Positions 5,263 through 54,461 of a stretch of DNA of 64,000 nt are shown in pieces. Below the pieces are notes generated by a model. That model worked only from the letters and a program-made list of their open reading frames with translations, did not search any database and was not told where the DNA came from. The stretch is from Chiloscyllium plagiosum (lineage: Eukaryota): assembly GCF_004010195.1 (NCBI RefSeq), contig NC_057753.1, positions 1,166,890-1,230,889 on the forward strand, read 5' to 3'. Position 1 is the first letter of the stretch; each line of letters begins with the position of its first letter. Made by a program: the position numbers and the translations under genes.

Positions 5263-5885
5263 TCGTCTAAGTCATTTCTAAAAGTGACAAACAGCAGTGG
5301 TCCCAAAACAGATCCCTGTGGTACACCACTAGTAACTGGGCACCAGGCTGAATATTTTCCATCAATTACCACTCGCTGCCTTCTTTCAAAAAGCCAGTTT
5401 CTAATCCAAACTGCTAAATCACCCTCAATCCCGTGCCTCTGCATTTTGTCCAACAGCCTAATATGTGGAACCTTATCAAAGGATTTACTGAAGTCCATGT
5501 ACACCTCGTCAACTGCCCTACCCTCATCTACATGCTTGGTAATCTTTTCAAAAAACTCTATGACGTTTGTGAGACACGATCTGCTCTTGACGAAACCATG
5601 TTGACTATCTGAAATGAAATGGTTGTTTGCTAGATGATTATAAATCCTATCTCTTATAATTCTTTTTAAAATCTTTCCTACAACAGAAGTAAGGCTCACT
5701 GGTCGAAAATTACCTGGGTCGTCGCTACTGCCCTTCTTGAACAAGGACACAGCATTTTCAATCCTCCAGTCCTCTGATACTAAACGTGAAGAAAATGACT
5801 GCTGAAGTTTCAAAGCCAAAGGCTCCGTTATCTCATCCATAGCTTCCCAGAGAATCCTTGGATATATCTCATTCGGCCCAGGGAA
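5263..5885 (-). mobile_element. CR1-type LINE RT fragment, abutted by the L1 5' end
   Basis: ORF 5211-5840: NFRPVSLTSVVGK, QHGFVKSRSCLTN, YMDFSKSFDKVPH, SGVPQGSVLGPLLF. Confidence 0.9.
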
Positions 5886-25800: not shown

Positions 25801-28800
25801 TATGAGCGGCATGGATAGAGTAGATAGGAAGCTTCTGTTTCCCTTAATGAAGTGTCCATACCGAAATAACGCCATAATTGGAAAATGAGGTACATGCAGG
25901 TTGAAGTGAATTTGAGGAAATGTGTGTTCAGCCAGGCGATGGTGAGAATGCACTGCCTTGAAGTGAAGTTGAAGCGTGAATCTTAATATGTAAGTGAATG
26001 AGCACTTCAAGTATCAAAGCATTCATCTCAAATGCTGGAAAGTGGGGTTATACTATATAGTTCGGCGCAGAGTCGATAGGTTGAAGTTTCTCTTCCGTGC
26101 TTAATGATTTTATGACTCTTCCTCCAGGGCAAACCATCTTTCTGGATCTACCCTACCAGGTCCTGTACGATTCTTGTATATTAGAGATAAGTTGACCTCT
26201 TATTCTTAGGTGTAAACGTGCGCATGCTTTCCATAAGTCTTCATTGTGATCCACGGCCAATCACTCCTTAATCGATGCTTTCCTCAGTCCTTCACTATGA
26301 TGCAGGATTATGTGGAAAAAAATCTTTGTGAGCATCTTTTTTTAACCTTTATATCTTTGTAGACTCAGCATATTTCACCGCTTCTGGTTTATAACCAATA
26401 TGAATGAACGAACTCTTCGTTTTTCTGTTTTCTTTCATAAGAAAATCTACAAATTGAGCATTTTATTGCTGACACAGTTTAGTTCCCAAGTGCCATGTTA
26501 TTTCACATTTTTATGCATTACTCTGCGCAATGATTATATTTAAGAAGCTTTTCAAGATAAGAATGAATTACTTATCGACAATAAAAGAAGCCCAAAGTCA
26601 TCCTTTTGCATAGAAGTAACTATTCCTTAGGAAACAATGTGCATCATTATGTGCTGCTCAGCGACACCTCAGTTATGAATGCTGTGGTCTCACACAACGT
26701 CACAATGCAATTGAAATGCGTTATTACCTTATGGACAGTTACAAATGTGCTGTACAGCATACTGAGAATAAAGAGCATAACGAAAGCCATGATGGCAAAT
26801 GAGTTGTTGGCATCTTCACCGACTTTTTCTTGATCGTCTTTTTCGATGCCATTGTCTTCTGGATGTTCCATTATTTCGGGGATGCCTGCAATCAATGGAT
26901 ACAATTTGTTATAAAATTAGTCACGTCGACAAAGAAAATCTTTAGAAAGTTTCTGTAATACCACAGAACTGGCACGTGGGATGTGACACATTTATTATTG
27001 GACTAAGTGAACTTGAAAATTGAATTGTTGCTGTATCATGGGACTTTCAAAATACTGTAGATCACGTAGTTTTGAGAACAGGCAAAAGAGGGCAGAGAAA
27101 AATCAGCACATCTAAGTCAGAGGAAGCCATGCTTATAAAATTGATTAGACGTTTTTGAATCTGCGATCATATGTGTGGATGAGGACAGTTTAGTTGACTA
27201 AGTTTACGTGTATTTTAGCAATGCTTCTAATACGGTCCCATATGGGAGACTGATTTATAATGTTAAGAAACAAGTAATTCAGGGAAACTTGGTGAGATTG
27301 ATCAGAAACTGACTTCGAAATGGGACACAGAGGGTAGTGGTAGACGGCTGTTTGAGGTGACTGGAATCTGAAGTCCTATGGTGTGCCACAAAAGAAAAAA
27401 CTGTAATAGGACCTTATTGTTTGTTATTTACGTAAATGTATAAGTGAAAATGTGGAGCGAATGTTAAGCATTTGCAGATGACACCAGGACTGGTACAGCA
27501 GTTAATAGTTACAAAAGTGGTTGTAGGATACAGGAAAATATGTATGGGTTGGTCAGACGTGCAGACTAGTAGCAGACGGTATTTAACCATGATAAATTTC
27601 TTCTTTAGAAGAAGAAACAAGATAATGGGGCATTTAATGAATGGCAGGGCGTTGAACTGCTATTTACCTCTGTTAAATTATGGCATCATTTCTGTAATTA
27701 ATGCACATTTCTCCACTTGAGCGTTAATTGTATCCAAGGTGATTCATATTATTTCCAAAACAGTTTCACTAACGAACATGCATTGACATTTTTGAAGTGA
27801 CCTAGATTATTGATCAATCATATAGTGCTCAAGTATATGAATGAAGTCTTGCAGAACCAGCGCACTATGAACACCATTCAGTCCATTAGCCTGTGTCAAG
27901 TCTAATGCTGGTTGCCAGTTCTTGATGAGTAACCTTGCAGGTTACGGCAACTCAGGTGCCCATACAGAATGAATATCTGTAACTTGATGCTTTCTGTCTG
28001 AACCATCAAACCAGGAAGCAAACCCCAGACAGCCGAAGACCGTTTTATTTACCTCATGTCCCGTGTAGTCTTCAAAGATTACCCTCCTGTTAATGACGGT
28101 CAGATATCCGTTTTCTAATGGGAGAATGCGACTATGGCAGCATTACTTCACTTAACGTCGTATTGTCTACATTAATGCAATTCCCCCTGACTTCACCACA
28201 GTAGCAACACGTCTTCGCTGCACATGCTACATAAGAACGATATTATTTTTCACAACTCGATTTAATCAGTTATCAGGTCCCTCTATCGTAAGGAAAACAA
28301 TAATGCTACATATAATCTTTCCTTACTGTAACAACGTAAAAGCCCTGACAATATTCCTTTGAACACTGTTGTGCGCTGTCCCGAACATTTGTGTTCTTCC
28401 AGTAATACAGTGAACTCTACACAAAACTGCATCAGTGATCTAACAAAGATCTTCCACAGTTCAAGCATTACGCCACTGTTTTTCTATTCAATATTTCATC
28501 AAAACAATGAATACACCTCGCACATTCCTTCTTTTTCGCAGTTTTTCTCCTGTCATGTAGTAATAATGGACCTGTGGACATAAAATTTAGTTTCTCTAAT
28601 ATCCTGTAGTCTTATTGATATCTTCCTGGTAACTGCATGTTTACATGTAATGTTCCTCTCAGCATATGCATAAATTTCCACTTTCATACTGAATGCAATG
28701 ATCTCATTCCAAATACGGAATTAAACCATTGATCTCAATCTGCATTCAACAGCCATGATCTTCAGGATCAACAATTACACCAGCTTTGTGTTATCAGTGA

Positions 28801-31800: not shown

Positions 31801-34800
31801 CTGCTGGATATGTAATATTTCATCGCCTTTACGAAGAGGGAGTCATAAATGCAATCTCATCAAATCAATTGACTTGAGCATGTTATTTTACACCTGACCA
31901 CAGCTTTAAACTTCTGTGACCATTCTGGAATTTCAGAACAGCAGAGGATTTCCTTTCCTTCATCGAATCATATTCAGAACACCATTCTGTAATAAACTTA
32001 GGTCAGGAGACCCAATGTGAGATTTGTGCCTTTTAGCTCTTGGATGTTGCAGAAACTTTGCCAAAGATGCTCTTCACTCATTTTAGGATGCAAGTCTTAT
32101 TGGGGGTGGGAGGGATGTGTGCGGCGTGTGTAGGTGGAGCACGTACCTGAGAACATGGACACCACCCTGCCAAACAATTCCCCACATTGCCCCATTAGTT
32201 CCAGCTTATTGTGCATGACAATTCAGCATGAATCTTAAAAGACAGTCTGCTTTGTACACAGGTTGCAATTATTACAACGTCATTATAGCAACGAACTGGA
32301 CAACTAATTCAGATTGTATTTAAATCAACTTAAAATACTTTAGGTGTATGTTTTCAATGCCCAAGTGAGATACGAATTTGCATGATAGCAGTCAAGGAAA
32401 ACGTGCAGGTTGTACATGGATGAGATTCAAAGCGTAGAGTTTTGAAGGAATGTGGTCTGTGATGCTGCGTGAGTGGATTTGGACACCACCGTATTTGAAT
32501 ATTTGGTATGACTGTTAAGTGAAGATGAGGATAACCAATTATGAATTTGGATGACAGAATGTCATTGGGTGGACATGATGGTAGCAATAACAATTTGGAT
32601 ATGTAAGAGGCCAGAATTCCATGGATGCTAAAGAACTGGTGAAAATAAAGTCGGAGCGAGTCACATCAATAATGGCACAAGACGATGTAGACAAATTTGG
32701 ATTAGTGAGGAATAGTAAGTAAGGGAAGAATTAATGGGCATTATTGAGTAGCGTTCAATCAGCTTGTTGATGATGAATGATTGGGAACTGCTGCAAATCG
32801 TTATGCTATGTTTATAGGTTTTTAGTCATTTTAAGATGATGGACAGTGGAAGATACATAGCAGACTGAGAGCTGAACGGTGGCACAGTGGTTAGCACTGC
32901 TGCCTCACAGCGCCAGAGACCCGGCTTCAATTCCTGCCTCAGGCGACTGACTGTGTGGAGTTTGCACATTCTCCCCGTGTCTCCTCGTCTCTGGGTGCCC
33001 CGGTTTCCTTCCACAGTCCAAAAATGTGCAGGTTAGGTGAATTGGCCTTGCTAAATTGCTCGTAGTATTAGGTGAAGGGGTAAATGTAGGGGAATGGGAA
33101 TGGGACTGGGTGGGTTGCGCTTCGGCGGGCGGTGTGGACTTGTTGGGCCAAAGGGCCTGTTTCCACATTGTAAATAGTCTAATCTAATACAAAAAAGTAA
33201 TGTCAAGAGGCACAGAAGGACTGGTTGAGCTTGTTGAAAGCAGATGTACCAGAAGACATGACAAGCATCTGTTGGAGTGAGTGAGACGTTTGGGCATTGA
33301 CTTACAGTTTAAGGAGGATGTAGACTCAGAAAACAAGTCAAATATCGCCAGAGGAAATGACCAATAGATAAATGGGACGAATAAGAGACGGACTGGGGTG
33401 GCACACAGAATATAGGACAATACATTGTGTGATTGGTGTTCACACATTAGATAGGTATGGAATATACACAGTTAACAAATAGGGAACTGTGTGTGAGAGA
33501 GTTATGTAGGACTAGTGTCGAAGTGGAATAAATCAGGGATAGTATGTAGTTTATACGTAGATGAGAGTCCAAGTACTGATCTTTGTGGAAACCAAAACTG
33601 AGGACTAGGATTAGACGTCACTTCAGGAGAATACTTGACAAAATTTATCAAACGAAGGTAAGAGCAATTTGGATGACAGATTGTCATGCTAACTATGTTG
33701 GCATCACGTCGGTTTTAGTAATTCTATTACAATGTGGATGCCCCACAAGCCAGGCCGAACAGAGGAGTGCTGCAAAGAAACATTTAGGATGAGTGTGATC
33801 TAATTAGAAGCAACCCCAGTGGATCTAAAATTCTGCACATGTCAGCAGGCTGCTGGCTGCCATATCAGAAGAGGATATCACATGCATTTTAATCAAAGGC
33901 TGCATCATCCTTGTTAAAACGCTATGCATAGAAACCAAGAATAAGTAAGTCAAAAAGTTTTCATTCTGCGTTTATTGTAATTATCAGAGCCACATACAGA
34001 CGCAAGCATAATTTCTATTCCTTCTAATAACGATGTGAAATGCTTCAAGCAATCTTCAGAACAATTACACTGACAAGACAAAGTTGTCCTTGCATTTCAG
34101 ATTCTAAACACAATTATCCTTAATTGACAGATAAAATTTGAAATAATGACTAATCTCTTATGTCCAAAAGTTTTTAGTATCAAGAATGTGACTGCACCAT
34201 ACAGTGAATTGAAAATGCATTGGATTGGTTCCTTCAACAGTTATTGACATCATGACATTTAGCTGTTTATGGAAAGCAAATAGTATACCACGGCAGTCTA
34301 AATGCAGGATTTAATAGTGTCACTTAGTATGACTGAAACATTAACAAATGTCGGTTTACCGTGAGATTTATTTGTACTTCTGATTAAATCCCGGCTGAGG
34401 GATGGGTGGCCCACTAAGCAGGAGTAAGTGGTGTCACTGTTCCATTCCGCTGCTGTGAGTCTCAATCCGCTGGTGATGAAACTGGAACCATTCCTCTTCT
34501 CGCTTTCTGATTGGGTCCGGTAGCTGGAATCCAGAAGGGTGTCATTAGCCATCCAACCAATGTAAATCTCATCTGGGTAAAAGCCGGTGGCTAAACACAC
34601 CAGAGTAGCCGAATTCTCAGTATCAATCTCCTCCATCGACGGATGCAGGAGATAAACCTTAGGAGGATGGAATTCACTGACTGTAAAGAGAACAATATTC
34701 ATTTAACTGAGCTCATCTTATAACTACATCGCAAGTTCTTTGTTAGTAATGCAAGTGGTTTATAAAATATTTCCTGTCTGCAAGACTGCGCAAATATCTC

Positions 34801-37800
34801 TGAATGCTAGAACATTTCCTGTCCCTTAAAAAAAACTTGGAGACAGTCACAGATTTTGAAATGTCTGCCACTCTCGGAGTGCAAATGATTGATCTACATA
34901 TCGGTCTTTACATTCATCATTATACTTTTGCAGAACAGTAGGATTCCAGACTACCAGCCAACTGACCAGTTAATGTAGAAATTTAATGAATCGATAATTT
35001 ATTTAATCATTCAATCACTCAATATCCAGTCTTTTCTCGTTAGTAACAAAAATAGGTCTTTTGGAAGGAGACCATGCTGGACTGGAAATGTTCACCCTCT
35101 TTGTCTTTCCACTGATTGTCCCAGTCCTGCTCAGTTACTCCAGCACCTTTTTTTCACTTCTGACTTCTGACTTTCGTCGGTATTTTGCTCATATTGCAGT
35201 ATGATCTCCACTTACCAATTGTCTTCTTGATAGTGGCTTTCACTGGTGTTGGTAATTCACTGTCTTCTACCAAGCAAACATATTCGGCACCACTGTCCCA
35301 CTCTGATGCCATTATTTTAAGTATGCTCACAATGGTGGATTTACTTCCAATCCGCTCGGGATTCTGCGTCTCGACCCCTTCCACTCTCTCAGTCCCGTTC
35401 ACTTGCCAGAAAACGTTGATATTTTCTAAGTCACTATAAACTATTTTGCATGCAATGGTCGCTGTCATTTCTTTCCAAATCTCTTCAAATGAAGGCTTCA
35501 GTAGATTGACAGAAATGTCTGGAAATCTGCATTCATCTGAAAAGAATAAGGAATTCACTATTTTCAGTCTGCATTGTTGAAATCAGTTCAAAAATATGAC
35601 ATGAGTTGGGGAATGTTTTATTTATGGCAATCTGTTAACTGCCTACTTAGTTTGTTTCAGCTTAGATAATTAGATGTTTGGTTCGCTTGAACTTGACGTT
35701 TCTATTCGCCCTCACTGCAAGGAATGTACCTTCATTAATATTTGTAATCTATTACTGTATATTTCGAAATTGCTGTGTCTTGCATATAATGGGACCTGAT
35801 TGCTTCCGTTCTGGTGCTGCACATTTACCTATTGCAATTTCTGATGCTGGAAGCTAGTTTATACTGCATGTCTTGCATTTGACAGATTATAATATCAGAT
35901 TAGGAAAAGGTCTTATAAATGTCCCATATTCCAGTGCTCTATTTATTTTTACTGTGTATGGAGATGTTGTCCTAGTGTCAACCGACACCTTGATTTTTTG
36001 TTGCGTTCTTTGACCCGACGTTTGATGTCCTATTTATTCAGGAAAATCTATTACCGACAAAAATGTGATACTTGCTACACAATGCACGCCTTGTAAAGAA
36101 CAGTCTGAAGATTGTGACACATGAACTATTCTTTGAAGAGTGTGAAGTTAAGAAATCTGGAATATTCTACATACAAAACTTTGACAGCTCAACGTTGATA
36201 CTGGGAACAGCTAAAACTAATAGTTGTCAGTATTGTGATAACTTTAAAGGGACATAAAAGACATCGGAAAACATGCTTTTAGGTTTCTTAACGCAAGATG
36301 GTCGCTCTTAATACAAATATAGTTAATTCCTTTATGGATGACAGAAAATATAAATGTAAAGAAGATCCTTAGATGTTTTTCTTGTCTTGTTAACTTAAAA
36401 CTTACAATTTTAATTCTATTAGCCTAACTGGTTAACTCTGAAAATTCCAAAATCTCTTGAGAGGACAAATGTTCTCTTCTGCAATCTCAATCGCAGTGTT
36501 TTAGGTTGTATGCATACAGTAAAACGTATGCATTTTTGGAATGATGCCAGTGCCGCAGTAATGTTGAATAGGTGGGGAGAAAATTGCTGAAACTATTTCC
36601 ATATTGATTAGTATTTCTGTTTTGCATTCGAAACTCGAAGACTGAATATTTGCTTGTCTGCGGGCAGTCCTGAGTTAATCACGTCCATTTCCTCAGTATG
36701 TAATCAGGGAGACAATTAACGTGAATTTGTGGATTGGCAACATGAACATAGGCTATATTATCATGTTTTCATTAAATAAGTGGGCAGTATTGCATGTTCC
36801 AAGATCAGTTCCATCTGAAGTGTCCGAGTGATAGTTTCTTCTTTAAAACTTTCTATCCTTTCAGTCGTAAAACTAAGTGTTAGGAGGAGAATGGGATTGT
36901 GAGAAAACTGATTGCAATAAAATTAATCATGTCCTCTTGCTAAAAGAGAAATCGAAGGTTTTAATGACTTTTTAAAGCAAACAATGTCAGTATGTTTCGT
37001 GTTAGTGTGATAGTTTTAAGCCTCAGCGTTCTAAACTTAAAACAACTCCCACATGTATCACGTTTCATGTGACATTCTTGCATCATCGTGGAAAGAAATG
37101 CGAGATTTAACCGTGATACACAAACGTGGGTGGTTTATAAACTTCATTGAGGAATTTTATCTTAACTGCTCAGTATTAACAATCCACAGGAAAATTGAAA
37201 TGTACGTATGCAGCCTATTCTACAGCAAATTCATATGACTTCCACTCAGTCATGCCCTTCGCAGGAGCATAATTACTTTCAGTTCCATCAAACCACCTCG
37301 GATGGAAAATGAAACAAAGGGACTGTATGTAACTCACGTGCATCTATTCTAATATAGCTTGCTAAGAATAATCTGCGGAGCTAAGTCAACGCTTGGACTT
37401 TCAGCAGTTTGCTATTTCTGTGCATGGATGCTCACCAAACGGAATTCCTCATGCGAAACATTTTTGACTGAGTCCATCAACAATATTTGCTCGGTTGCTT
37501 CTTTGCTGTTTCCCGTTGTTGATGAGATTTGTTTGCACCCTTCAGTCACGTCAGCTAGTGTTCCATCCAAATTTACACAGTAATTGTCGGCAGATGAATG
37601 ACCAGAGAGATATTTCAGCCCATTAATCTACTCCCTTAATCACAAACCCATGTACCATAGATCAGTGTTCAAAGTTTTGGGCGTTACTATTCACTGCTTT
37701 AAGGCCACTAATGGTTGGCACAGTTATCTGTCTATTCTGGCGACGTCTAATGAGAACGGTACTGAAGAATAGAGTCCTTGAAATATACAAGATAATTCAC

Positions 37801-40800
37801 ATACTTGAGCTCCACACTTGGGCAACTGATCAGGTTGTATTTATTCGTACCTCTCAGTTGAAGTCAGCAATCACTCATGCTGGACCGAAAGCAGGATTAT
37901 GAAACATTAGTTGGCAGCATTCTTCCATTTGTCATCATTAACTGTTGTCTGAAGGTATCATACCTTCAAGAGTTAATTGTGCAATGAAGAATTTAAAAAA
38001 AATCCTAACTTTTCTCATCAACCTATTTAGAAAAGTTATTACACAACTCTGGAGCCGATGACACTCGAACTCAAACCTGCCAGGTCGTTACCAATGCTGT
38101 AGGAAATGGATCCTTGTATCTGTTATATCAACGGTTCTCACACTGGTTGAAGTGGAGCACTTGGATATCATTTATTCCACGGTCTACCAACTGCCTGCCT
38201 GGTCTGTGTTAAACTTTTTTTTTCAAGGAGTTGTCGTGCATTTTAAAGTTTTCTGAATCTTTGAACATTCGATCACAGTTTCATCTAGTGTCGACATTTG
38301 ACACAAAGCATTATTTGTGAGAATAATTACTGAGGAACAGTTCTTACCATTATGGTTTCTGATAACCCTTTTCACAATGGATTGGGAAGGTGGATGCGAG
38401 ACAGTGCAGGTGTATTTTGCTCCACTGTTCCATTCTACTGCAGATAAAATGAGGAGGCTCCTTGCACTGAAAGTCAGATCCTGTTCCAGAGCAGTGGGAA
38501 AATTGGTGATGTTTGCGCTCACAGAAGCCCCGTCTTTCTCCCAAGAAATACTTATACTATCAGGATAGAATCCTCTTATCAAACATGTTAGAGTGGCAGA
38601 GCTGGTGTTTTGAATCTCTTCTGGTGACGGGGGAAATACGTGGAGATTTGGCTTAATTGGTACAACTGTAATAGAATTATAGAGAATATTAATTTTTCGT
38701 TTATGGCCATTCGTTAATAAAACGACATATAAAAACATTTCCTTTTCGTAACCAACCTCTTTGTTTTCCTGTTCGTTTTGATACTGGGGTCGATGACTGA
38801 TTCTGTTTTGCGGAGCATATGTATTCCGTCCCACTCTGCCACTCTTCCATGCTGCTGGTCAAGCGGCTGATGGTCAGATATTGGTTTCCTTCCATTTTAG
38901 CTGCTTCGATTTTAACACCATAATTCCTTACCTTCCCATCCACCATCCAAGAGATGACTACCCCAGCAGAAAGTGTAGAGAGCACTTCACAAACCAGAGT
39001 GGCAGTTTTATTGATCCAGATTTCTTCAACCAATGGATTCCTTAGCAGCACAGCAATCTCTGTTAGTGATGAATCAGAAATTCAGATTTTGGATCATGTT
39101 CCAATAATGTAACTGCGAAAGTTACAAGAGATTCGAAAATATACCTATTTCTCTCACTGATATGTATTGAACTTGAAACACGACTGTTTTCTCCATGGTT
39201 ATTGACTTGCATCACATATGAAGTGAGTGATAATTAGGGAGAGAGCGAGGTAAAGACAGACAGACTGAGAAAGTGAGATGTACGCAGAAAGATTGTCATT
39301 GAGAGAATGAGAGTGACATACCGAAGAAAATAACCAGAGAGAGGGTGAGTGTCAGACAGTATCAAAAAGACTAGAGAAGGAGGCATGGAGAGCGACCGAT
39401 GCAAGCAGAAAGACAAGCACATGGAGTAACAATGAATGATGCACAACAATGATTAATATCTACAGTGACGGGAAGGTAAAGGAAGAATTATTTTCGATAT
39501 GGACAATGGAAAACACAGAAAACGAAGAACAAGAGAAATCGGTGGAAACATACAGACGGATGGATAAACAGAGACAGAGCAAGACTGACAGTAACAAAGA
39601 GATTGATAAAAAGGAAGATTGACATTGAGAGACAGAAAATTTACCACACTGCGATGCTCAATGAATTTAAGTGCAGACGACAATTGAGATCATTATCGCT
39701 GACAAGTCACTAAAATTCTGTCCAAGAAATCCCTGCACTATAAATTGTTATTGATATCACTCACTGCCACTAGTTCAAGAATGCTTCACTCTCATATACA
39801 GACTACCAGTATAATATTCCATCTGATTATGAATATGACTATCTTTTATGATTGTGAGCTTGTGAGTACATTTAATTTTCTTACCGGATGTTGATCTAAC
39901 TTCTTTTCTCTGATTACTGTTAGTTGCAGAATGAAAAACATGACAGCTGTACATAGAGCCGCTGTTCCATTCCTGCTGGGATACTTTAAGTAAACTTGTA
40001 GAGCTGAAGTCATCGGTCGATGTTTTCATTGGGGATGTAGTTGTAAAACCAGAACTGATGACATTTTTGTTCTTCTGCCAACTGACCACAATGTTTTTAG
40101 GATAGTATCTGCTGATTATACAAATCAAATGTACAAATCCGTTTGCTCTCTTTTCTTCAGTTGCAGAATAAAATAGACTGATGACTGGTGCAGTAGGCTG
40201 TAGTCCTAAAATTACAAAAAAAATGAGACTTACTCTCTTTTGTACTTTCGATTGGACTGTTTCTGTAATGTCCCATTCAATCGATAACTCTCAGATATTA
40301 CATAAAACATATGATTTTATCATGTTGTTGTGTCATTATGTCATGTTGCTGAAAGATATGGTTCACAGCGTTTGCCTCATCTTTAACTGTGAGCTGAGCT
40401 CCAAACTGCAGAGAGTCACATAACATGGATATAGACCGTGTGGTCTAAGTCATCCATGCCAAACGGATTTCTTAAACTTGACCAGTTCAATATGCCGATG
40501 TTTGGCCTATAACTCTTCAAACCTTTCAATTTATTGTACCCTTCCAAACGCCTTTTAAATTTTATAACTGTCTATACAATTTCTTCGGCAGTAGATTCCA
40601 GAAACCAACCACATTCTGTGCAAAAAAACAAAGGTGTGGCTTCGGTCCCTTTTAAACCTTTTCAATGTCACCTTAAACCTATTCCCTCTAGGTTTGAACT
40701 CCATTATCCTAGGGGAAAAGGCCTTCGCCATTTACCTTATCTGTGTTTTTCATGATTTTATAAACAGCTGTAAGGTCACACCTTTATCTCCACTATTTGG

Positions 40801-46800: not shown

Positions 46801-49800
46801 GGACTCAACCTGCATGTTTACCTTTAGAGAATCCTCGACTAGCACTCCCAGATCCCTTTGTGCTTTGGCTTTATTAATGTTCTCACCATTTAGAAAGTAG
46901 TCTATGCTTTTATTATTTTTGCCAAAGTGCAAGACCTCGCACTTGCTCACGTTAAAGTTAAACATCTTGCATGTTTACTCTAGATTTCAGCATCTGCAGT
47001 TTTTTTTTGTCTATTCCTCCCTTGCTAACCAGGGGTGTTAAATTAGCCATGTTCCAGTCCTCTGGGACTCTCCCTAATTCCAGTGATTCCTGAAAGATCA
47101 CCCTCAATGCCTCCACAATATCCTGAGCTATTTTCTTCAGAACTCTGGGGTGCAGTCCTTTCAATCGGGTGATTTATTCACTTTCAGATCTTTAAGTTTC
47201 CCTAGCACCTTTTCCTTAGTGACCAGTCAAGTGGGGAATATTCTATCACATTCCTAACTTGTGCCTTCTAGATAGTAGGCAGTTTTTGGGGAGTCAGGTG
47301 TTGAGTTATCTGCTGCAATATTCCTAGTCTCTGACCTGCTCACTGTAGTCACTGTATTTATATGATGAGTGCAGTTGAATTTCTTGTCAATGGTAAATCC
47401 CCATGATGATGATAGTGGGGGATTCAGTGATGGTAACACCTTTGAATATTAAGACGCAGTGGTTAGATTTTCTCTTATTGGAGATGCTCATTGCCAGACA
47501 TTTGTGTGGCACGAATGTCCCATGGCAAAATGTGTAAAGTTTCATTTTTCAAGACAAGCATGTGAAAAGCACATTTCTGTGAATCTTGATAACACATGTC
47601 TTCATTAGCATTTACTATAGAATTGTAGAATGACAGTAAAGTTAAGCCTCTCATCCAAAGATTTCTGTGCTGGTTCTTTGGGCGAGCTATCCCATTAACT
47701 CCATTTCCCTTCTTGTTCACCATGACCCTGTAACTGTTTTGCTCATGTGTAAACTGTCACTTAGCTAGTTAATTATAATCCCCACTGCATGACAAGAGCA
47801 TACGAATCTCGGCTGAAACTTTGGTGAATTTCTGAAGGAATGTTGCATTGTTGGAGGAGCTGTCTATCAGCTGCGATGGAGGACCGCTCTGCCCTCTTAA
47901 ATGGATATGAAAGATTCCATGATGCTGCTTCAATCAATGCCTCTGCTATTTCCTCAGCCACCTCTCTCAGAACTCTAGGGTGTATCCCATCGGGGCCAGG
48001 AGATTTATCAATTTTAAGACTTTTTAACTTTTCTAGCACTATCTCTTTCGTAATGGCAACCCTCAACTCAGCCCCGTGACACCCTTTAATTTTTGGGATA
48101 TTACTCATGTCTTCCACTGTGAAAATTGACGCAAAGTACTTGTTAAGTTCTCCTGCTATTTCCTTATCTCCCATCACTAGGCTTCCTGCATCAGTTTGGA
48201 GTGGCCCAATGTCTACTTTTGCCTGTCGTTTGTTTCTTATGTCCTGAAAGAAACTTTTACTATTATTTCTAATATTACTGGCTAGCCTATCTTCATATTT
48301 GATCCTCTCCTTTCTTATTACACTCTTTGTTATCCTCTGTTTGCTTTTGTATCCTTCCCAATCTTCTGATTTCCCACTGTTCTTAGCCACTTTATAGGAT
48401 CTCTCTTTTTCTTTAATACATTTCCTGACTTCCTTTGTCAGCCAAGGTTGTCTAATCCCTCCCCGGTTAATCTTTCTTTTCTTGGGAATGAACCTCTGTA
48501 CGTGTCCTCAATTTTACCTACAAACTCCTGCCATTTTTGCTCTACTGTCTTCCCGGTTAGCCTCTGCTTCCAGTCTATTTTAGTCAGTTCCTCTCTCATG
48601 CCCTCATAATTACCTTTATTCAACTGTAACACCATTACATCCGATTTTGCGTTCTCCCTTTCATACTCCAGATTGAACTCTATCATATTATGGTCGCTAC
48701 TTCCTAAGGGTTCCCTTACTTTAAGATCTTTTATAGAGTCTGGTTCATTGCAAAGCACTAGGTCCAGAATAGCCTGCTCTCTTGTGGGCTCCATGACAAG
48801 CTGTTCCAAAAAGCCATCCTGTAAGCATTCCATGAATTCCCTTTCTTTAGATCCACTAACAACATTATTTACCCAGTCCACCTGCATATTGAAGTCTCCC
48901 ATGATCAATGTAACCTTGCCTTTCTGACATGCTTGATTTTCATCAGTTCACCACTCCATCAAATGATTAATCAACTATTAACTGAATGACATAACGGTAC
49001 GTATATACAAAAGTGGAATCAGTTTTGGCATTAATACATTTCGAGGGGAAGTAACTGTTTTGGCAGACAATTTCATGAGTGGTCAAGTTGCGTGAAGCAC
49101 AGAAATGGAGAAAAACGATTGTTTCACTGCATTCTTTCCTGTATCCTAGAAATGTTCCCAACAAAAATTATTGTTCTCTCTTTGTGATGACATCTTGCAT
49201 ATCCGTTTTTTTTTCAGTACAATCTTCTTTTCACCGTTTTCCTTCAGACCTCTCTGGCAACACTGGGGACCAGACTAATTCCTGGGACAGCAGTATTACT
49301 TGTTAAGAGTGACTGACTCGGTTAGGAGCATATTCACTGGAGTTGAAAGGAATGAGGAAACGCTCACAGAAGTGTTTAAGCTCTAACAAGATAAAGAGAA
49401 TTCTTTTTTTTATCGAACAAATGATGAGCCGATGGGATTTTCTGCGAGAGAAATTAGTTTGGGCCAAGACATTATTTGTTTCGACAGGATTCAGATGTAC
49501 CTCTTCGGGCTAAATGAATAACATAGCATAGGGAGAAAGAGGGTACTGAACTGAATGATCTGCCAGAATCATATTGAATGACAGCAGGCTCGAATGGCCA
49601 AATAGTTTTCTGTCACTCACATTTTTAATATTTCCATGTATGAGATGGAGGTTTTTTTTGAGTTAATATCAGTTGTCACTCTGTTGAGCTGATTTGCTGT
49701 CCTGTAAAAATCACTGTATACTTTCCCTTACGGGAAAATGACAAACGGTTATTTGCTTAGGTGGCTCCATTCAGATTTGAAGTTGGAACACGTTTTAACA

Positions 49801-52040
49801 TTTTTTTTCCTGTATATTATAGCCTTTGCAGCCAGCATCAGAGGCTTGTTGCTCTGGCCGAGAAGAATGTTTCCCAAGTAGAACAAGTGATCACTGTGAT
49901 GGTAAAAATGGTCCTGTTAATAAATGTAAGCGGGGTTGTAAAATTCATATGGCTGTCAGTTTTTCACTGTAGGGAAACGTGATATTGCATAAATATTAAG
50001 TTTTCATGTTCACTAAAGCTTGCAGGTAAATAACTAAGCTACCTTTCATAAACACGGTCAGTTAAAATTAATTAATAATTTCAGGAAATTTGTCATCACA
50101 CTAACAACATTCTGCTGGAAGTTCTTAATATTCAGTTGCAGAGGGCATTACCCTCTGAAGTGTGAAATTATTCAGCGCACCCTAAAGATGCAGTAACGGC
50201 AGTTTCTTCGTTTTCATATTATTCTGTGAATGTTTAAATTGAAAAAGTTGATGTCAGTTTGAGTGGAGTGAATGGTTCGTGCTGTGGGACTGTTACCAAG
50301 GCAAAGCCCTACTTCTGTTTTGGCATTCACTGTCAATTGTTAACCACTTACGTGGATTTCGCCTCAGATCACCTCCACTAATAACTGATGTTTCCAAGCA
50401 TGCAAAAGGAAGGTAACTGCATCGCAAAAACAATGCCACTGTGCACACCTCAACTCATTGATGCTACTCATTTTGATGTGTTGATTAAATTCTGGCGTTA
50501 CGTGAGATCAAGACAAAACGTTTTGAACAGACAGGTTGCCTGGTTCGAATAAAAGAAAGGAAGCAAACAACACTAAGTGTAACGAGTGAGCCAATGAGCA
50601 AACTATTGCATTCTAAGCAACAAATATTGAACAAATGGGCATAACATGCACTTTAAATTTAAACTGACAGTTTACACTGAAACTACAGTTGCGTTAAAAT
50701 GATCGAATATTCGACACAACCTTGCATACAACAAGCTTCGAACTACAGATGTACTTGCGACAATGTTAATGCAATCGATATTATTTTACATAATAAGATT
50801 GTCTTTTGAAACACTTTAAAATTAGACGCAATAAAAAAAGTTTGCAGAAAATCTCCCTCAATGCCAAATTCTATTACTTGTTTGATTTAGAAGTTCTATG
50901 CATCTGTGGCGCACTGGCAAGCCTTAATTCAGGGTAACTGAGTAGGCTGTTTCGTTTGTAACGACTTAATTCCATTATCTACTCACATATGCATCTTACG
51001 TTCTCTATGCTAAGTTGGCTATCTGTTCAAATTGTTATATGCTTTTTTCCAGTTTAAGTTATATACTTAAACATATATTTATCCTTGAGAAAAATCTGAA
51101 CTGAGGTTAATCTACGACACATACATCACAGCACAAATATCTGAGTCTATGGGAAAATGCTCTGTTTCGCAAGTTATGCAATTGAGCCTGTTTAACCTGA
51201 ATAATAATCCTTTACAAGACATCAGCAAAATCATAGCGAGTTTAAGTAAGGGAGGAAACTTACCAGGGTTCACAGTCAGAACGGTGCCACTCCCTTTTTG
51301 GTAGTAGAACAGACAGCTATGTCCAGTTAGTCACAGTGACATATCCCATTGCAAAAATAATTGGTCGCACATAACTGTAAGTCGAACAGCAGCTCTGATC
51401 ATCTTAATGTCTCTTCTCTGGATTTGGCCGCTAAATATTGCTATCAGTCATTTGAAATCGTCTTCTGCTATTCTAGGCGACATTTGCTGGCCTCAAAGTG
51501 AATGTTGAGTGTTGAAAAGACAAGTCAAGCCCAATTTATTTCTCAGGAGATTTGATGGCGTTTTTGCATTAGTAGAACGTCAGGTTCATTACTGTGATCG
51601 TCACATGCTCCACATCTATACGTGCCACTGTCCTCAACTCTCAGATCACTAATTTTCAGAGAAAAGGACGATAATCCCTCGTTTACTGATTCAACATATC
51701 GTTCACCAGTTGATATGCTCTCCTCGTTTGTTGAGCCCAATTTTGTCCAATACCAGCCTGTGCTGTACAATCCGTAGTTAACATCTCTTAGGACGCAGTT
51801 GATGGTTAAAGATTCGCCCGAAGTTTTTGTTGCTGATCTCGGTTTTTGATCAATCCTTGAAGTTAATACATCTGGATGGGGAAAAGTATATTTAATGCAT
51901 GAAATTCGTCGATAAATAGGAAAGTTTTTAGACAAGGACATTTAAGTAACGTAAATGTGATTTTAGTTAAATAATCGTTATGAGAAACAGCACTGACTTG
52001 GTAACCTGGTTAAAAGGACTGAAAGCAAGAAAATATTCAT
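22798..52040 (-). CDS. IgNAR: IgNAR heavy-chain gene cluster, multi-exon: L-V-[DJ]-C1-C2-C3-C4-C5(sec)-TM1-TM2; requires V-DJ recombination
   Basis: Leader, VNAR, J, five C1-set exons closely resembling known shark IgNAR C1-C5, secretory tail and a CART-motif TM exon, all on the minus strand in the expected order. GT/AG boundaries, phase-1 introns, no internal stops seen. Confidence 0.97.
23860..23960 (-). mobile_element. Short Penelope-derived fragment with a degenerate hammerhead motif
   Basis: Minus strand CTGAGGA-AGGGTCACTGCATT-GAAAACGTT, same family as 9620-9800. Confidence 0.6.
24805..25020 (+). mobile_element. HE1/V-SINE-like SINE, 5'-truncated
   Basis: gcgtgggtttcc...aaagatgtgcaggtcaggttaattggccatgcgaaattg...aatctaatct tail. 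Confidence 0.8.
25440..26110 (+). mobile_element. Degraded CR1 3' fragment
   Basis: [12 protein letters not shown] remnant at about 25600-25640. Confidence 0.7.
26728..26885 (-). CDS. IgNAR: IgNAR TM1 exon (acidic spacer plus transmembrane helix)
   Basis: Acceptor ttgcag|GC and donor AAG|GTAATA. Translation [53 protein letters not shown] carries the antigen-receptor CART motif (FxxLFxLSxxYSxxVT). Confidence 0.92.
29470..29729. repeat. 98-bp direct duplication flanking an isolated SINE head
   Basis: 29470-29567 is repeated at 29632-29729 with one mismatch. Between the copies lies the minus-strand SINE 5' end gggcggcacggtggcacagtggttagcactgctgcctcacagcgcctgagacccgggttcaa (29629-29568). Confidence 0.95.
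32877..33190 (+). mobile_element. HE1/V-SINE-like SINE, near full length
   Basis: tRNA-like head ggtggcacagtggttagcactgctgcctcacagcgccagagacccggcttcaattcc, central domain, and tctaa-type tail. Confidence 0.9.
33971..33976 (-). terminator. Candidate polyadenylation signal, secreted form
   Basis: AATAAA on the minus strand about 320 nt after the secretory stop codon. Confidence 0.65.
34298..34680 (-). CDS. IgNAR: IgNAR C5 exon plus secretory tailpiece
   Basis: Acceptor tttacag|TC. Translation [36 protein letters not shown]...[42 protein letters not shown]. Internal donor G|GTAAAC after 34360 serves TM splicing. Tail has an NVS sequon and a penultimate Cys. Confidence 0.97.
35216..35536 (-). 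CDS. IgNAR: IgNAR C4 exon
   Basis: Acceptor ttttcag|AT and donor G|GTAAGT; 321 nt. [48 protein letters not shown]...[22 protein letters not shown]. Confidence 0.97.
38348..38665 (-). CDS. IgNAR: IgNAR C3 exon
   Basis: Acceptor tattacag|TT and donor G|GTAAGA; 318 nt. [36 protein letters not shown]...[19 protein letters not shown]. Confidence 0.97.
38757..39059 (-). CDS. IgNAR: IgNAR C2 exon
   Basis: Acceptor ctaacag|AG and donor G|GTTGGT; 303 nt, with a 91-nt intron to C3. [28 protein letters not shown]...[22 protein letters not shown]. Confidence 0.96.
39885..40205 (-). CDS. IgNAR: IgNAR C1 exon
   Basis: Acceptor aattttag|GA and donor G|GTAAGA; 321 nt. [46 protein letters not shown]...[29 protein letters not shown]. 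Confidence 0.97.
46135..46960 (-). mobile_element. Young CR1 LINE 3' end in the J-C1 intron
   Basis: Open 245-aa frame [12 protein letters not shown]...[19 protein letters not shown]...RRLRGDLIE...WNSLP. Terminal 8-mer repeats (gaccataa on plus) at about 46139-46156. Confidence 0.95.
47935..48930 (-). mobile_element. Young CR1 LINE segment (endonuclease C-terminus to RT linker)
   Basis: IMGDFN...[15 protein letters not shown]...GSSDHN (48438-48908) and [15 protein letters not shown] (47773-48390). One frameshift. Confidence 0.92.
51264..51331 (-). CDS. IgNAR: IgNAR D-J segment, apparently germline-joined
   Basis: 68 nt: A CTA ACT GGA CAT AGC TGT CTG TTC TAC TAC CAA AAA GGG AGT GGC ACC GTT CTG ACT GTG AAC CCT G|GTAAGT = [22 protein letters not shown]. 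Has the J motif GxGTxLTV and a perfect donor. Confidence 0.93.
51332..51359 (+). promoter_or_regulatory. 12-spacer recombination signal sequence 5' of the DJ segment
   Basis: Heptamer CACAGTG (51332-51338), 12-nt spacer (51339-51350), nonamer GCAAAAATA (51351-51359). Confidence 0.93.
51559..51596 (-). promoter_or_regulatory. 22-spacer recombination signal sequence 3' of V
   Basis: Heptamer CACAGTA (51596-51590), 22-nt spacer, nonamer GCAAAAACG (51567-51559). Confidence 0.92.
51597..51871 (-). CDS. IgNAR: IgNAR variable (VNAR) exon
   Basis: Acceptor ttttccccatccag|AT. (N)[91 protein letters not shown]. Shows the short FR2/CDR2-deleted VNAR architecture. Confidence 0.97.
51998..52040 (-). CDS. 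IgNAR: IgNAR leader (signal peptide) exon
   Basis: ATG AAT ATT TTC TTG CTT TCA GTC CTT TTA ACC AGG TTA CCA A|GTCAGT = [14 protein letters not shown], matching the known IgNAR leader type [14 protein letters not shown]. 126-nt phase-1 intron to V. Confidence 0.95.
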
Positions 52041-52134
52041 ATTTTCTGCGTCAGCAGATAGAACGCTTTTACAGAGCCGAAGCCAGATTTCAATACCATC
52101 TATCCTGTGAAACATGTGTGTCAGAGCATCGACC

Positions 52135-52167
52135 TTATAAACCTTACGTGATTGTCTTTATTTGCAT
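52135..52167 (-). promoter_or_regulatory. V promoter: octamer plus TATA-like box
   Basis: ATGCAAAT (52167-52160) lies 20 nt upstream of TATAA (52139-52135), which is about 95 nt upstream of the ATG. Confidence 0.8.
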
Positions 52168-52242: not shown

Positions 52243-53415
52243 ATCTGGATTAGTGGTGCTAGAACAGCACAGCAGTTCAGGCAGCATTCGAGGAGCAGTA
52301 AAATCGACGTTTCTGGCTAAAGCCCTTCATCAGGAATAAAGGCAGAGAGCCTGAAGGGTGGAAAGATAAGCTAGAGGAGGGTGGAGGTGGGGAGAAAGTA
52401 GCATAGAGTACAATAGGTGAGTGGGGGAGGGGATGAAGGTGATAGGTCAAGGAGAAGGGTTGAGTGGATAGATGGAAAAGAAGATAGGCAGGTAGGACAA
52501 CTCATGGGGACAGTGCTGAGCTGGAAGTGAGATGTTCCCTAAGGCGCTCTGCTAGGAGGCGCCCAGTCTTCCCAATGTAGAGGAGACCGCATCGGGAGCA
52601 ACGGATACAGTAGATGATATTAGTGGATGTGCAGGTAAAATTTTGATGGATGTGGAAGGCTCCTTTAGGGCCTTGGATGGAGGTGTGGGCACAGGTTTTA
52701 CAGTTCCTGCGGTGGCAGGGGAAAGTGCCAGGATGGGGGGGTGGGTCGTAGGGGGGCGTGGACCTGACCAGGTAGTCACGGAGGGAACGGTCTTTGCGGA
52801 AGGCGGAGAGGGGTGGGGAGGGGAATATATCCCTGGTGGTGGGGTCTGTTTGGAGGTGGCGGAAATGTCGGCGGATGATTTGGTTTATGCGAAGGTTGGT
52901 AGGGTGGAAGGTGTGCACCAGGGGCGTTCTGTCCTTGTTGCGGTTGGAGGGGTTGGGTCTGGGGGCGGAGGTGCGGGATGTGGATGAGATGCATTGGAGG
53001 GCATCTTTAACCACGAGGGAAGAGAAATTGCGGTCTCTAATGAAGGTGGCCATCTGGTGTGTTCTGTGGTGGAACTGCTCCTCCTGGGAGCAGATACGGC
53101 GGAGGCGGAGGAATTGGGAATACGGGATGGCATTTTTGCAAGAGGTAGGGTGGGAAGAGGTGTAATCCAGGTAGCTGTGGGAGTCGGTGGGTTTGTAAAA
53201 AATGTCAGTGTCAAGTCGGTCGTCATTAATGGAGATGGAGAGGTCCAGGAAGGGGAGGAAGGTGTTAGAGATGGTCCTGGTAAATGTAAGGTCAGGGTGG
53301 AATGTGTTGGTGAAGTTGATGAATTGATCATCCTCCTCGCGGGAGCACGAGGTGCGGCCAATGGAGTCATCAATGTGGCAGAGGAAGAGGTGGGGAGTGG
53401 TGCCAGTGTATGTGA
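52243..53415 (-). mobile_element. Penelope-like element, 5'-truncated (RT C-terminus, GIY-YIG endonuclease, terminal repeat with hammerhead motif)
   Basis: ORF 52502-53449: HIDD..., LPFLDL, YKPTDSHSYLDYTSSHP, Cys motif PCHRRNCKTC, NIIYCIRCSRCGLLYIGKTGRLLAERLREH. Hammerhead core CTGATGA...GAAACGTC at 52333-52306. Confidence 0.93.
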
Positions 53416-54461
53416 ACATATTAGTAAAGTAATGAAGTAAACAATTCATTGTAGATTGAGTAAATTTCCACGCATCAGGCTAGATGACATGTGCTAAATT
53501 TCCTTCTTTATTAACTTGATAATTTTTGAATTTCTTATCCGGGAACACCTGCAATGATAAGACAGCGAACTCATGCTCAAAGGCCACAGTTGAATAATTC
53601 CGATTGAAATCACACACACAGTGCTCTCTGACAATGGAGTGGCCACCCAGCCGTGTCTATGAATGCCAAACTGGTCTGAGACGTGACAATAGAAACATGT
53701 TTGGTGTCTCCCTTCCCTTCATAATCTGGTCTGAAATATATATTGAAATTAAGAATGTCTTTGAACATTTAAATAGTACTGAAAATAAATGTTGATCTTT
53801 AAGAATTCAAAATTCAGAAGTGAAGAGTAAAGATTCAAAAAGAACAGAACACTGTAAAGGCAAAAACAAGAGACGATAGTCAGCAGGTTTACAAATGGAT
53901 AGAAACATCACGCAGGATTTGCTTCTGTGGAAACCTCTGTTGACCTCTGTTTCAGCGATTTGGATGTCAACCTCAAGTGAGTGCTCCTGAAATTTGAATA
54001 ATGTATTCAAGTACACATTTTGATTAACAATTTAGGAAAAAACAATCAAAGAGAAAACGATAAAATGGAGCAATAATCTTTAAGTCACGATTACTTGTGG
54101 AAATTTTGCCGTCTTTAAACAAAAGAGCAATGTTATTCCTTTGAATTAGCAGACGTTTGATGCTTTGAAATGGAAGGATTTTTTGAGAATACCTTTAAAG
54201 CATGATAGAACTCTAAAATAAACACATGAAATTCCAGTTAATTTTTAAAAATTATGAAATCAGCACAAATTAGGACAAATGATTAATCAAAGATAATATA
54301 CCATATTTCGACAGTTCAGAATTCGAATCCACCCAAGAGTTTGAAGATTATGAGTTCAAAGCCGATATCAGAGATTCTGTATAATGAGGACTGGCATGTG
54401 GATGTACCGGTATGGGGAATGCATGAAATTTGCTATTTTCATTGCTCAAAGACCAAAGAAT

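What the first reader, a model, noticed from the sequence alone, without database searches (positions are those of the whole stretch)
51264..51596. IgNAR cluster with no free D segments: V plus a germline-joined D-J, a one-step rearranging locus
Seen: V ends in a 22-spacer RSS (51596-51559). About 200 bp on, a single 12-spacer RSS (51359-51332) directly abuts a 68-nt segment that runs in frame into J and the splice donor. I found no other heptamer between 51360 and 51558. The segment has about 25 nt (ACTAACTGGACATAGCTGTCTGTTC) ahead of the J-like TACTAC start. Established: canonical IgNAR clusters are V-D-D-D-J and need four joins; in shark heavy-chain clusters V and J carry 22/23-spacer RSSs and D 5' sides carry 12-spacers; germline-joined clusters exist in sharks (joined VD/VDJ IgM clusters, D-D fusion in type III IgNAR). 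Inference: RAG acted in the germline and fused one or more Ds to J, leaving a heavy-chain-only antibody that rearranges like a light chain with one variable junction. I cannot tell whether this exact V/(D)nJ configuration has been reported.
Basis: partly seen in the sequence, partly recalled or inferred. Interest (0 to 1): 0.9.

Follow-up and report, generated by a model that had tools for sequence, protein, structure and literature searches.

The report
IgNAR gene needing one V-J join
A complete shark heavy-chain-only antibody (IgNAR) gene has no free D segments, so a single V-to-J-like join builds its binding loop, most of which, including two cysteines, is already written in the germline.

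Summary
On the minus strand lie a leader, a VNAR-type V with a 22-spacer RSS, a 199-bp spacer, one 12-spacer RSS flush against a 68-nt J-like segment, then C1-C5, a secretory tail and TM1.

Contigs from two further samples carry the same V-spacer-J layout without indels, so it is not an assembly slip or a lymphocyte allele.

One spliced transcript contig joins the untrimmed V end, one added base and the segment minus 2 nt, in frame, and runs on into C1. The one-step join therefore happens and is expressed.

A Chiloscyllium punctatum gene model (V 75/83, C1 102/106 identical) has the Cys-bearing 5' part contiguous with J, so the long segment is shared between two species.

The origin by germline D-to-J fusion remains inferred.

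Wei et al. 2021 report "pre-joined D gene segments" in three bamboo-shark IgNAR clusters, so this may already be drawn in their Figure 1B.

The scan noted this same stretch once more (s1-883898), and not on other DNA.

The parts
52160..52167 (-). Ig-type octamer ATGCAAAT about 120 nt upstream of the start codon; a TATA-like TTTATAAGG follows
   Evidence: Read directly. Promoter function not tested.
51998..52040 (-). Leader exon (ATG at 52040; 43 nt)
   Evidence: The joint 51998|51871 is present in contigs of X9 and X19.
51872..51997 (-). Leader intron, 126 nt, GT..AG
   Evidence: table 5: skipped in X9 and X19, retained in X3 and X8.
51597..51871 (-). VNAR-type V exon. It has no Cys in CDR1 or FR2, and its germline 3' end reads CGACDD, so it encodes one CDR3 cysteine.
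   Evidence: translation. Pfam V-set E 5e-10. Best PDB matches are 30 VNAR chains, top 1ver_A at E 1.4e-38.
51559..51596 (-). V-side RSS: heptamer CACAGTA, 22-nt spacer, nonamer GCAAAAACG
   Evidence: The X9 joint begins exactly at 51597.
51360..51558 (-). 199-bp V-to-signal spacer with no D element. It is removed in the rearranged transcript.
   Evidence: 6 of the 8 differences in the X8 contig fall here.
51332..51359 (-). The only signal between V and J: nonamer, 12-nt spacer, heptamer (7/7), flush with the coding segment
   Evidence: No difference here in X3 or X8.
51307..51331 (-). 25-nt 5' extension of the J-like segment (reads LTGHSCLF; second CDR3 cysteine). Candidate D-derived part.
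   Evidence: From the Cys codon on it is contiguous with J in the C. punctatum model P0163. D origin is inferred.
51264..51306 (-). J core ([14 protein letters not shown] plus 1 nt), donor GTAAGT at 51263
   Evidence: The X9 contig continues from 51264 into C1-like sequence, 29 of 30 letters equal to 40204-40175.
39885..40205 (-). C1 exon
   Evidence: Pfam C1-set E 3e-19. Best PDB hit is IgNAR C1, 4q97_A. 102/106 identical to P0163.
38757..39059 (-). C2 exon
38348..38665 (-). C3 exon
35216..35536 (-). C4 exon
   Evidence: (best PDB hit 2mkl_C, IgNAR).
34298..34680 (-). C5 exon with secretory tail, ending at stop TAG 34300-34298
26728..26885 (-). Transmembrane exon 1
   Evidence: tblastn of P0166 (C. 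punctatum IgNAR constant region) and splice sites. No Pfam hit.

Best explanation
This is a working IgNAR heavy-chain cluster whose germline layout is V (22-spacer signal), a 199-bp spacer, then a 12-spacer signal flush with a long J-like segment. There is no free D.

Shown:
- In B cells RAG makes one 12/22 deletional join.
- In the one transcript seen, the V end is untrimmed, one base is added and 2 nt of the segment are lost. The frame is kept and the exon is spliced to C1.
- The CDR3 is therefore almost wholly germline-written and carries one cysteine from the V end and one from the segment. The only variable junction lies between them.

Inferred:
- The first 22-25 nt of the segment are what is left of one or more D segments that RAG fused to J in germ cells, as in other germline-joined shark Ig clusters. 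The D's 5' 12-spacer signal was left in place.
- The fusion predates the split of this species from Chiloscyllium punctatum.
- The two cysteines form a small disulfide-closed loop, giving a semi-invariant, innate-like VNAR.
For: - Anatomy and signals.
- Full set of constant exons.
- Germline status: one 1112-nt contig of X3 spans 51150-52100 with 5 base differences and no indel. One 993-nt contig of X8 spans 51150-51780 with 8 differences and no indel. Neither shows a V-J joint.
- One-step join and expression: an 809-nt contig of X9 has leader spliced to V, V to 51597, one letter, the segment from 51329, then 255+ letters that match the C1 start 29/30.
- X19 also holds leader spliced to V.
- Congener: P0163 of C. 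punctatum is 75/83 identical in V and 102/106 in C1, and maps to every exon. Its J exon starts CLIYYQKGSG.
- Extra length: three independent VNARs end in the shared DVYGGGTVVTVN preceded by varied residues, and another ends NEKGAGTVLTVK. Those J parts start 2-4 residues before G-x-G, against 12 here.
- P0162 has the same CGACD V end and a Ser-Cys-aromatic motif before its J core, with 8 further residues between.
- Literature: canonical clusters have three Ds and four joins. Partial and full germline joining by RAG is established in sharks. Pre-joined D segments are reported in bamboo-shark IgNAR2, 5 and 6.
Against: - No unjoined IgNAR cluster was aligned, so the D origin of the 25 nt is not shown.
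- A 37-nt stretch 5' of the G-x-G codons may still be within the range of a natural long J (my own knowledge of J lengths in other loci, not tested).
- I could not establish whether unjoined IgNAR J segments carry 12- or 22/23-spacer signals. The 12-spacer signal therefore does not by itself mark a D.
- Only one junction was seen, in one assembled contig of one run. Contigs hide rare variants, so the breadth of junctional diversity is unknown.
- That contig's C1 start differs by one base (Pro to Arg) from the window. This may be an allele or a switch into a paralogue's C1.
- The X8 contig has a TAA stop at V codon 40, 31 nt from the contig end. At least one allele may be dead, or that contig end is unreliable.
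- P0163 is a gene prediction. It shows the segment from the Cys codon on, not the absence of Ds in C. punctatum.
Confidence: 0.7

Rival explanations
1. Native long J. The 68-nt segment is simply this lineage's J, with its own 12-spacer signal. The Ds were lost by an ordinary deletion, or the lineage never had them. The gene still works in one step, but no germline RAG fusion took place.
For: The long segment is shared with C. punctatum, and a like motif sits next to the J core in P0162 from another species. This fits an old, stable J as well as an old fusion. IgNAR V(D)J is thought to have been exchanged with the TCR-delta-linked NAR-TCR. By my recollection, which I did not test, J segments at that locus carry 12-spacer signals.
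Against: J-encoded ends of other VNARs start only 2-4 residues before G-x-G. P0162 has 8 more residues between the V-end Cys and the Ser-Cys motif, as expected if free Ds exist in that relative. The reviews read state that IgNAR clusters carry D segments.
Confidence: 0.22
2. Artefact. The D-less layout is a mis-assembly, or a somatically D-J-rearranged lymphocyte allele captured in the reference.
For: None found. The tissue of the reference sample is unknown to me.
Against: Contigs from two other samples of another study carry the same layout with their own SNPs and no indel. A C. punctatum genome model has the same Cys-bearing J exon. A private lymphocyte D-J join would not recur in other animals or in another species.
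Confidence: 0.02
3. Decaying relic. The cluster is on its way to being a pseudogene, and the transcript seen is a leftover without function.
For: The X8 contig carries a premature TAA in V. In white-spotted bamboo shark blood 96% of the VNAR repertoire comes from one other cluster, if that is this species.
Against: All exons are open with good splice sites. Both signals and the segment are unchanged in X3 and X8, while the 199-bp spacer has 6 differences in X8. The transcript join is in frame. Four runs of study P3 each hold about the share of words expected from leader, V and J exons (0.36-0.37; only X9 was laid).
Confidence: 0.06

Closest known systems
Bamboo-shark IgNAR clusters with 'pre-joined D gene segments' (IgNAR2, IgNAR5, IgNAR6 of Chiloscyllium plagiosum; Wei et al. 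2021, PMC8692893; I read sections 9, 26, 28, 31 and the Figure 1 legend)
   Same: Seven IgNAR clusters lie within 800 kb. Four are complete with five C exons, Sec and Tm. 12-, 22- and 23-spacer signals are listed. Pre-joined Ds are reported in three clusters. The window's C region is 96-97% identical to a C. punctatum model. The scan's notes place other complete and incomplete IgNAR clusters 133-478 kb away. This locus may therefore be one of those clusters.
   Different: The text says each complete cluster has one V, three D and one J. It does not say that any cluster lacks free Ds or joins in one step. Figure 1B is not held and supplements are closed, so I cannot tell whether this exact layout is drawn. 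The species of the window is coded and is only inferred.
Nurse-shark type III IgNAR cluster (D1-D2 fused in the germline; as described in reviews PMC4622739 and PMC3149040, passages read)
   Same: A partly germline-joined IgNAR cluster with fewer joins and restricted CDR3.
   Different: Type III keeps two D units and needs three joins. Here there is no free D and one join. This V has no CDR1 cysteine. Early-life expression was not tested here.
Partly joined shark IgM clusters (VD-J, VD-DJ, VDJ) and germline-joined light-chain VJ genes made by RAG in germ cells (PMC5192425 passages; Lee et al. 2000, PMC2193156, abstract)
   Same: Same proposed mechanism: RAG-type joining in the germline that leaves a shorter, less diverse gene.
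   Different: Those are conventional heavy or light chains. Here V stays split from a fused D-J-like unit in a heavy-chain-only isotype, so one somatic join remains.
Light-chain V-J clusters of cartilaginous fish
   Same: It works like one: one V, one J-like unit, and a single 12/22-23 join.
   Different: It is not a member. The constant region is five IgNAR C1-set exons with Sec and TM, and V is a single-domain VNAR.

Membership tests
IgNAR heavy-chain cluster | VNAR-type single V domain | tested here: met
   Pfam V-set. 30 of the 31 PDB sequences at E<=1e-10 are VNAR or NAR chains, top E 1.4e-38. 4 of 4 database hits are VNARs.
IgNAR heavy-chain cluster | Five C1-set constant exons, secretory tail and TM exon downstream, in the same orientation | tested here: met
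   C1 and C4 find IgNAR C1 and C4 structures as best PDB hits.
IgNAR heavy-chain cluster | Canonical V-D1-D2-D3-J layout needing four joins | tested here: not met
   There is no D and no further signal between 51360 and 51558. A transcript shows a direct V-to-segment join.
IgNAR heavy-chain cluster | Transcribed as leader-V-(D)J-C1 | tested here: met
   The X9 contig has the leader|V splice, the V-J joint and continuation into C1.
Germline-joined (partly) shark Ig cluster | Fused segments contiguous in germline DNA, not only in lymphocytes | tested here: met
   Same layout in contigs of two other samples and in a C. punctatum genome model from the Cys codon on. The tissues of the runs are unknown.
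Germline-joined (partly) shark Ig cluster | Fused part is homologous to free D segments, and flanks match those of unjoined paralogues | not testable with these tools
Other clusters of this genome are outside the window. There is only indirect length and motif evidence.
Germline-joined (partly) shark Ig cluster | Junction footprints of RAG joining (trimming, P nucleotides) at the D-J border | not tested
   This needs the unjoined D and J for comparison.
Type III IgNAR | D1-D2 fusion with a further free D; CDR1 cysteine | tested here: not met
   No free D. The V translation has only the two canonical cysteines plus one at the V end.
NAR-TCR | NAR V-D-J followed by a leaderless supporting TCR-delta V | tested here: not met
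   J is followed by IgNAR C1-C5, and the transcript splices J to C1.

The most novel reading that the evidence does not exclude
This is a conserved, innate-like IgNAR lineage of carpet sharks. V and a fused D-J unit each bring one germline cysteine, so a single join closes a pre-designed disulfide mini-loop in CDR3. The result is a semi-invariant heavy-chain-only antibody aimed at a fixed class of targets. It has been kept since before the Chiloscyllium species split and is echoed in a more distant relative (P0162). It is possibly polymorphic for a null allele.
Probability: 0.3. Interest if true: 0.6.

Novelty: new member of a known kind. Interest (0 to 1): 0.42.

Why it matters
IgNAR diversity is usually explained by three Ds and four joins. 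A cluster that keeps only one join shows that RAG-driven germline joining has also reshaped the heavy-chain-only isotype towards a nearly fixed binding loop. The same happened for neonatal IgM and for light chains in sharks.

For people who make VNAR binders, this scaffold has a germline-encoded CDR3 with two cysteines and a single site of variation.

For evolution, it offers a datable germline RAG event, because the layout is shared by two Chiloscyllium species.

Tried and rejected
NAR-TCR reading: rejected. IgNAR C1-C5, Sec and TM lie downstream and the transcript splices J to C1.

Somatic or assembly artefact: rejected.

A fully V-J-joined germline copy as the source of the X9 contig: unlikely. 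The X3 contig runs unbroken through both coding/signal borders, and no joint was seen in X3 or X8.

Type III membership: rejected.

Nurse shark as the source: rejected. C1 and C4 show many substitutions against nurse-shark IgNAR structures, roughly 70% and 85% identical by eye.

Searches that led nowhere:
- The V query found no database VNAR above 71% identity (4 hits of 6 candidates). I therefore did not spend a search on the J segment.
- Peptide and DNA strings of the segment found no relevant paper: one search gave 0 papers, and one search gave 3 papers that were all unrelated primer matches.
- "IgNAR" with 12-RSS/23-RSS gave nothing on IgNAR signals.
- The search of earlier findings by sequence was blank and returned only titles for other clusters.
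- Four id look-ups on three papers that may give the IgNAR or NAR-TCR signal order or type-3 detail were not held: Roux 1998, Criscitiello 2006, Streltsov 2005.

No structure was predicted. The rearranged V domain would have had to be typed as a joined sequence.

Figure 1B and the supplements of Wei et al. 2021 could not be seen. They may show this exact layout.
Full report
WHAT IS THERE

The gene lies on the minus strand. Its parts, in order:
- An Ig-type octamer (52167-52160) and a TATA-like string precede the ATG at 52040.
- Leader exon: 52040-51998.
- Intron of 126 nt.
- V exon: 51871-51597.
- V-side signal: heptamer CACAGTA, 22-nt spacer, nonamer GCAAAAACG (51596-51559).
- A 199-bp spacer.
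- A single 12-spacer signal (51359-51332; heptamer 7/7, nonamer 6/9).
- Flush with that signal, a 68-nt open segment (51331-51264) that reads [22 protein letters not shown] plus one base.
- Donor GTAAGT.

About 11 kb further on lie five C1-set exons, a secretory tail and a TM exon. A LINE endonuclease/RT remnant sits in the J-C1 intron.

Exons were searched one at a time. I built no spliced model.

V is a VNAR. It matches Pfam V-set. Of the 31 PDB sequences at E<=1e-10, 30 are NAR variable domains. C1 and C4 find IgNAR C1 and C4 structures first.

Between the two signals there is only one weak heptamer-like string without a nonamer and one 4/7 string. The number of signal-like strings in the window is not itself beyond chance: 7, against a mean of 3.2 and a maximum of 7 in 30 shuffles. 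Position and use are what make these two real.

IS IT GERMLINE?

One call of read laying put contigs of 4 of 4 chosen runs on 51150-52100.
- X3 (sample S2, study P2) has one 1112-nt contig across the whole stretch, with 5 base differences and no indel.
- X8 (sample S4) has a 993-nt contig across 51150-51780, with 8 differences and no indel, plus a 277-nt contig over the leader region.
- Neither shows a V-J joint.

Both contigs keep the leader intron and the spacer, so they are genomic. Their own SNPs show that they are not the reference sample.

In X8, 6 of the 8 differences fall in the 199-bp spacer. None falls in either signal or in the 68-nt segment.

A lymphocyte-private D-J join or a mis-assembly cannot recur like this.

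IS IT USED, AND IN ONE STEP?

X9 (study P3) holds one 809-nt contig. It reads as follows:
- the leader is spliced to V (51998|51871);
- V runs to its last coding base, 51597;
- one extra letter follows (A in gene orientation);
- the segment runs from 51329 to its end;
- at least 255 more letters follow, whose first 30 equal the C1 start in 29 positions.

V is 273 nt in frame from 51869. With one added base and 66 nt of the segment, one base is left over for the split codon with C1, so the join is productive.

The added A is what a one-base P addition to the untrimmed V end would give. It could equally be an N base.

X19 (another study) holds the leader spliced to V.

The shares of words held by X9-X12 (0.36-0.37) are about what the three exons alone would give. 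Only X9 was laid, so expression in the other three runs is inferred.

This is one junction in one assembled contig. It proves that the direct join occurs and is transcribed. It does not show how diverse the junction is.

RELATIVES

Database VNARs reach only 71% identity to this V (4 hits of 6 candidates).

A full scan of representatives found 247 proteins at E<=0.001. A search with the Triakis IgNAR found 16 hits among 8000 scored candidates.

The first of these gave P0009 and the second gave P0163, both from the C. punctatum genome (named). P0009 is a paralogous germline V read through its signal.

P0163 is a 663-aa gene model. Its identity to the window:
- same leader;
- V 75/83 identical;
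- C1 102/106 identical;
- C3-C5 95-97% identical in tblastn pieces.

I take P0163 as the orthologue. I take the window's coded organism as a close congener of C. punctatum, probably the white-spotted bamboo shark. This is an inference.

The model jumps from inside V to an exon that reads [18 protein letters not shown]. The Cys-bearing 5' part is therefore contiguous with J in that genome too. The model cannot show whether Ds lie between V and that exon.

P0162 (661 aa, no source name) has a V that is 59/86 identical and also ends CGACD(E). Eight residues follow, and then a Ser-Cys-aromatic motif directly before its J core.

The pair of a V-end cysteine and a J-proximal cysteine is therefore not private to this gene.

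P0170 and P0172 are engineered fusions. I read only their VNAR part. It has the same C1 start as P0162 but ends NEKGAGTVLTVK, with varied residues before that end.

ORIGIN OF THE LONG SEGMENT

Three independent VNARs share DVYGGGTVVTVN after varied residues. Together, this shows that J-encoded parts start 2-4 residues before the G-x-G motif. Here 12 residues precede it, about 8 extra codons.

The extra part carries a cysteine at about the distance from the J core at which other VNARs carry theirs.

The literature I read says the following:
- Canonical clusters have three Ds and four joins.
- Sharks have clusters joined partly or fully in the germline, including VD-DJ.
- RAG-like activity in germ cells explains them (abstract).
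- Nurse-shark type III has D1-D2 fused.

All of this fits a germline D-to-J fusion that left the D's 5' 12-spacer signal in place. It is not proof, for two reasons:
- I could not learn which spacer unjoined IgNAR Js carry, because the papers were not held.

I put the fusion origin at about 0.6-0.65 and a native long J with loss of Ds at about 0.2-0.25.

PRIOR WORK

Wei et al. 2021 (sections 9, 26, 28, 31 and the Figure 1 legend read) report for the white-spotted bamboo shark:
- seven IgNAR clusters within 800 kb, four of them complete;
- signals with 12-, 22- and 23-bp spacers;
- "pre-joined D gene segments" in IgNAR2, IgNAR5 and IgNAR6;
- juvenile-biased IgNAR6;
- 96% of the blood repertoire coming from IgNAR1.

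The scan's own notes place complete and incomplete IgNAR clusters 133-478 kb before this window. That pattern is compatible with this being one of those clusters.

Their text still counts three Ds per complete cluster. It does not mention a D-less, one-step cluster.

Figure 1B is not held and supplements are closed, so this layout may or may not be in print.

My searches found no text that describes an IgNAR V-DJ cluster.

HOW IT MOST LIKELY WORKS

Shown:
- a 12/22 deletional join of V to the segment;
- splicing to C1;
- an open frame.

Inferred:
- a CDR3 of nearly fixed length and sequence, with variation only at the one junction;
- two germline cysteines nine positions apart in the transcript seen, closing a small loop;
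- an innate-like specificity, perhaps favoured early in life like other joined shark genes.

AGAINST FULL FUNCTION

The X8 contig reads TAA at V codon 40 (51750), 31 nt from the contig end. This is either a null allele or a contig-end error.

VERDICT

- The one-step reading is supported by direct evidence.
- The germline-fusion origin is plausible but unproven.
- The kind of thing is known, so novelty is modest: a further, more extreme member of partly joined shark Ig clusters, possibly already figured.

Noticed in passing
51750 (window), run X8: The contig of sample S4 reads T for A on the + strand. This turns V codon 40 (Tyr in FR2) into TAA. It may be a null allele of this cluster. The site is 31 nt from the contig end, so it could be an assembly error.
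   Followed up: partly
51757 (window): All four laid runs read T for C on the + strand (Gly to Asp at V codon 38). The reference allele is the odd one out, and the C. punctatum orthologue also has Asp there.
   Followed up: partly
52505-53479, minus strand: A 325-aa open frame just upstream of the IgNAR promoter ends in a GIY-YIG nuclease motif (Pfam E 3e-5). It looks like a Penelope-type retroelement remnant. An earlier scan note mentions a Penelope candidate in another IgNAR locus of this genome.
   Followed up: partly
46231-48947, minus strand: LINE-like open frames lie in the 11-kb J-C1 intron (endonuclease-reverse transcriptase domain, Pfam E 1e-8). A further RT remnant lies at 5214-5897.
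   Followed up: partly
run X9 contig beyond 51263: The transcript's C1 start differs from the window's C1 by one base (Pro to Arg at the fourth C1 codon). This is either an allele or a switch of the assembler into a paralogous cluster's C1.
   Followed up: no
29465-29758, minus strand: An open frame holds a direct repeat of about 30 residues ([21 protein letters not shown]...EKETADT, twice) between C5 and the TM exon. I could not explain it.
   Followed up: no
P0162 (database protein, no source name): A full-length IgNAR of another species has the same CGACD V end and a Ser-Cys motif next to J, but 8 more CDR3 residues. This suggests a sister cluster that still has free D segments.
   Followed up: partly
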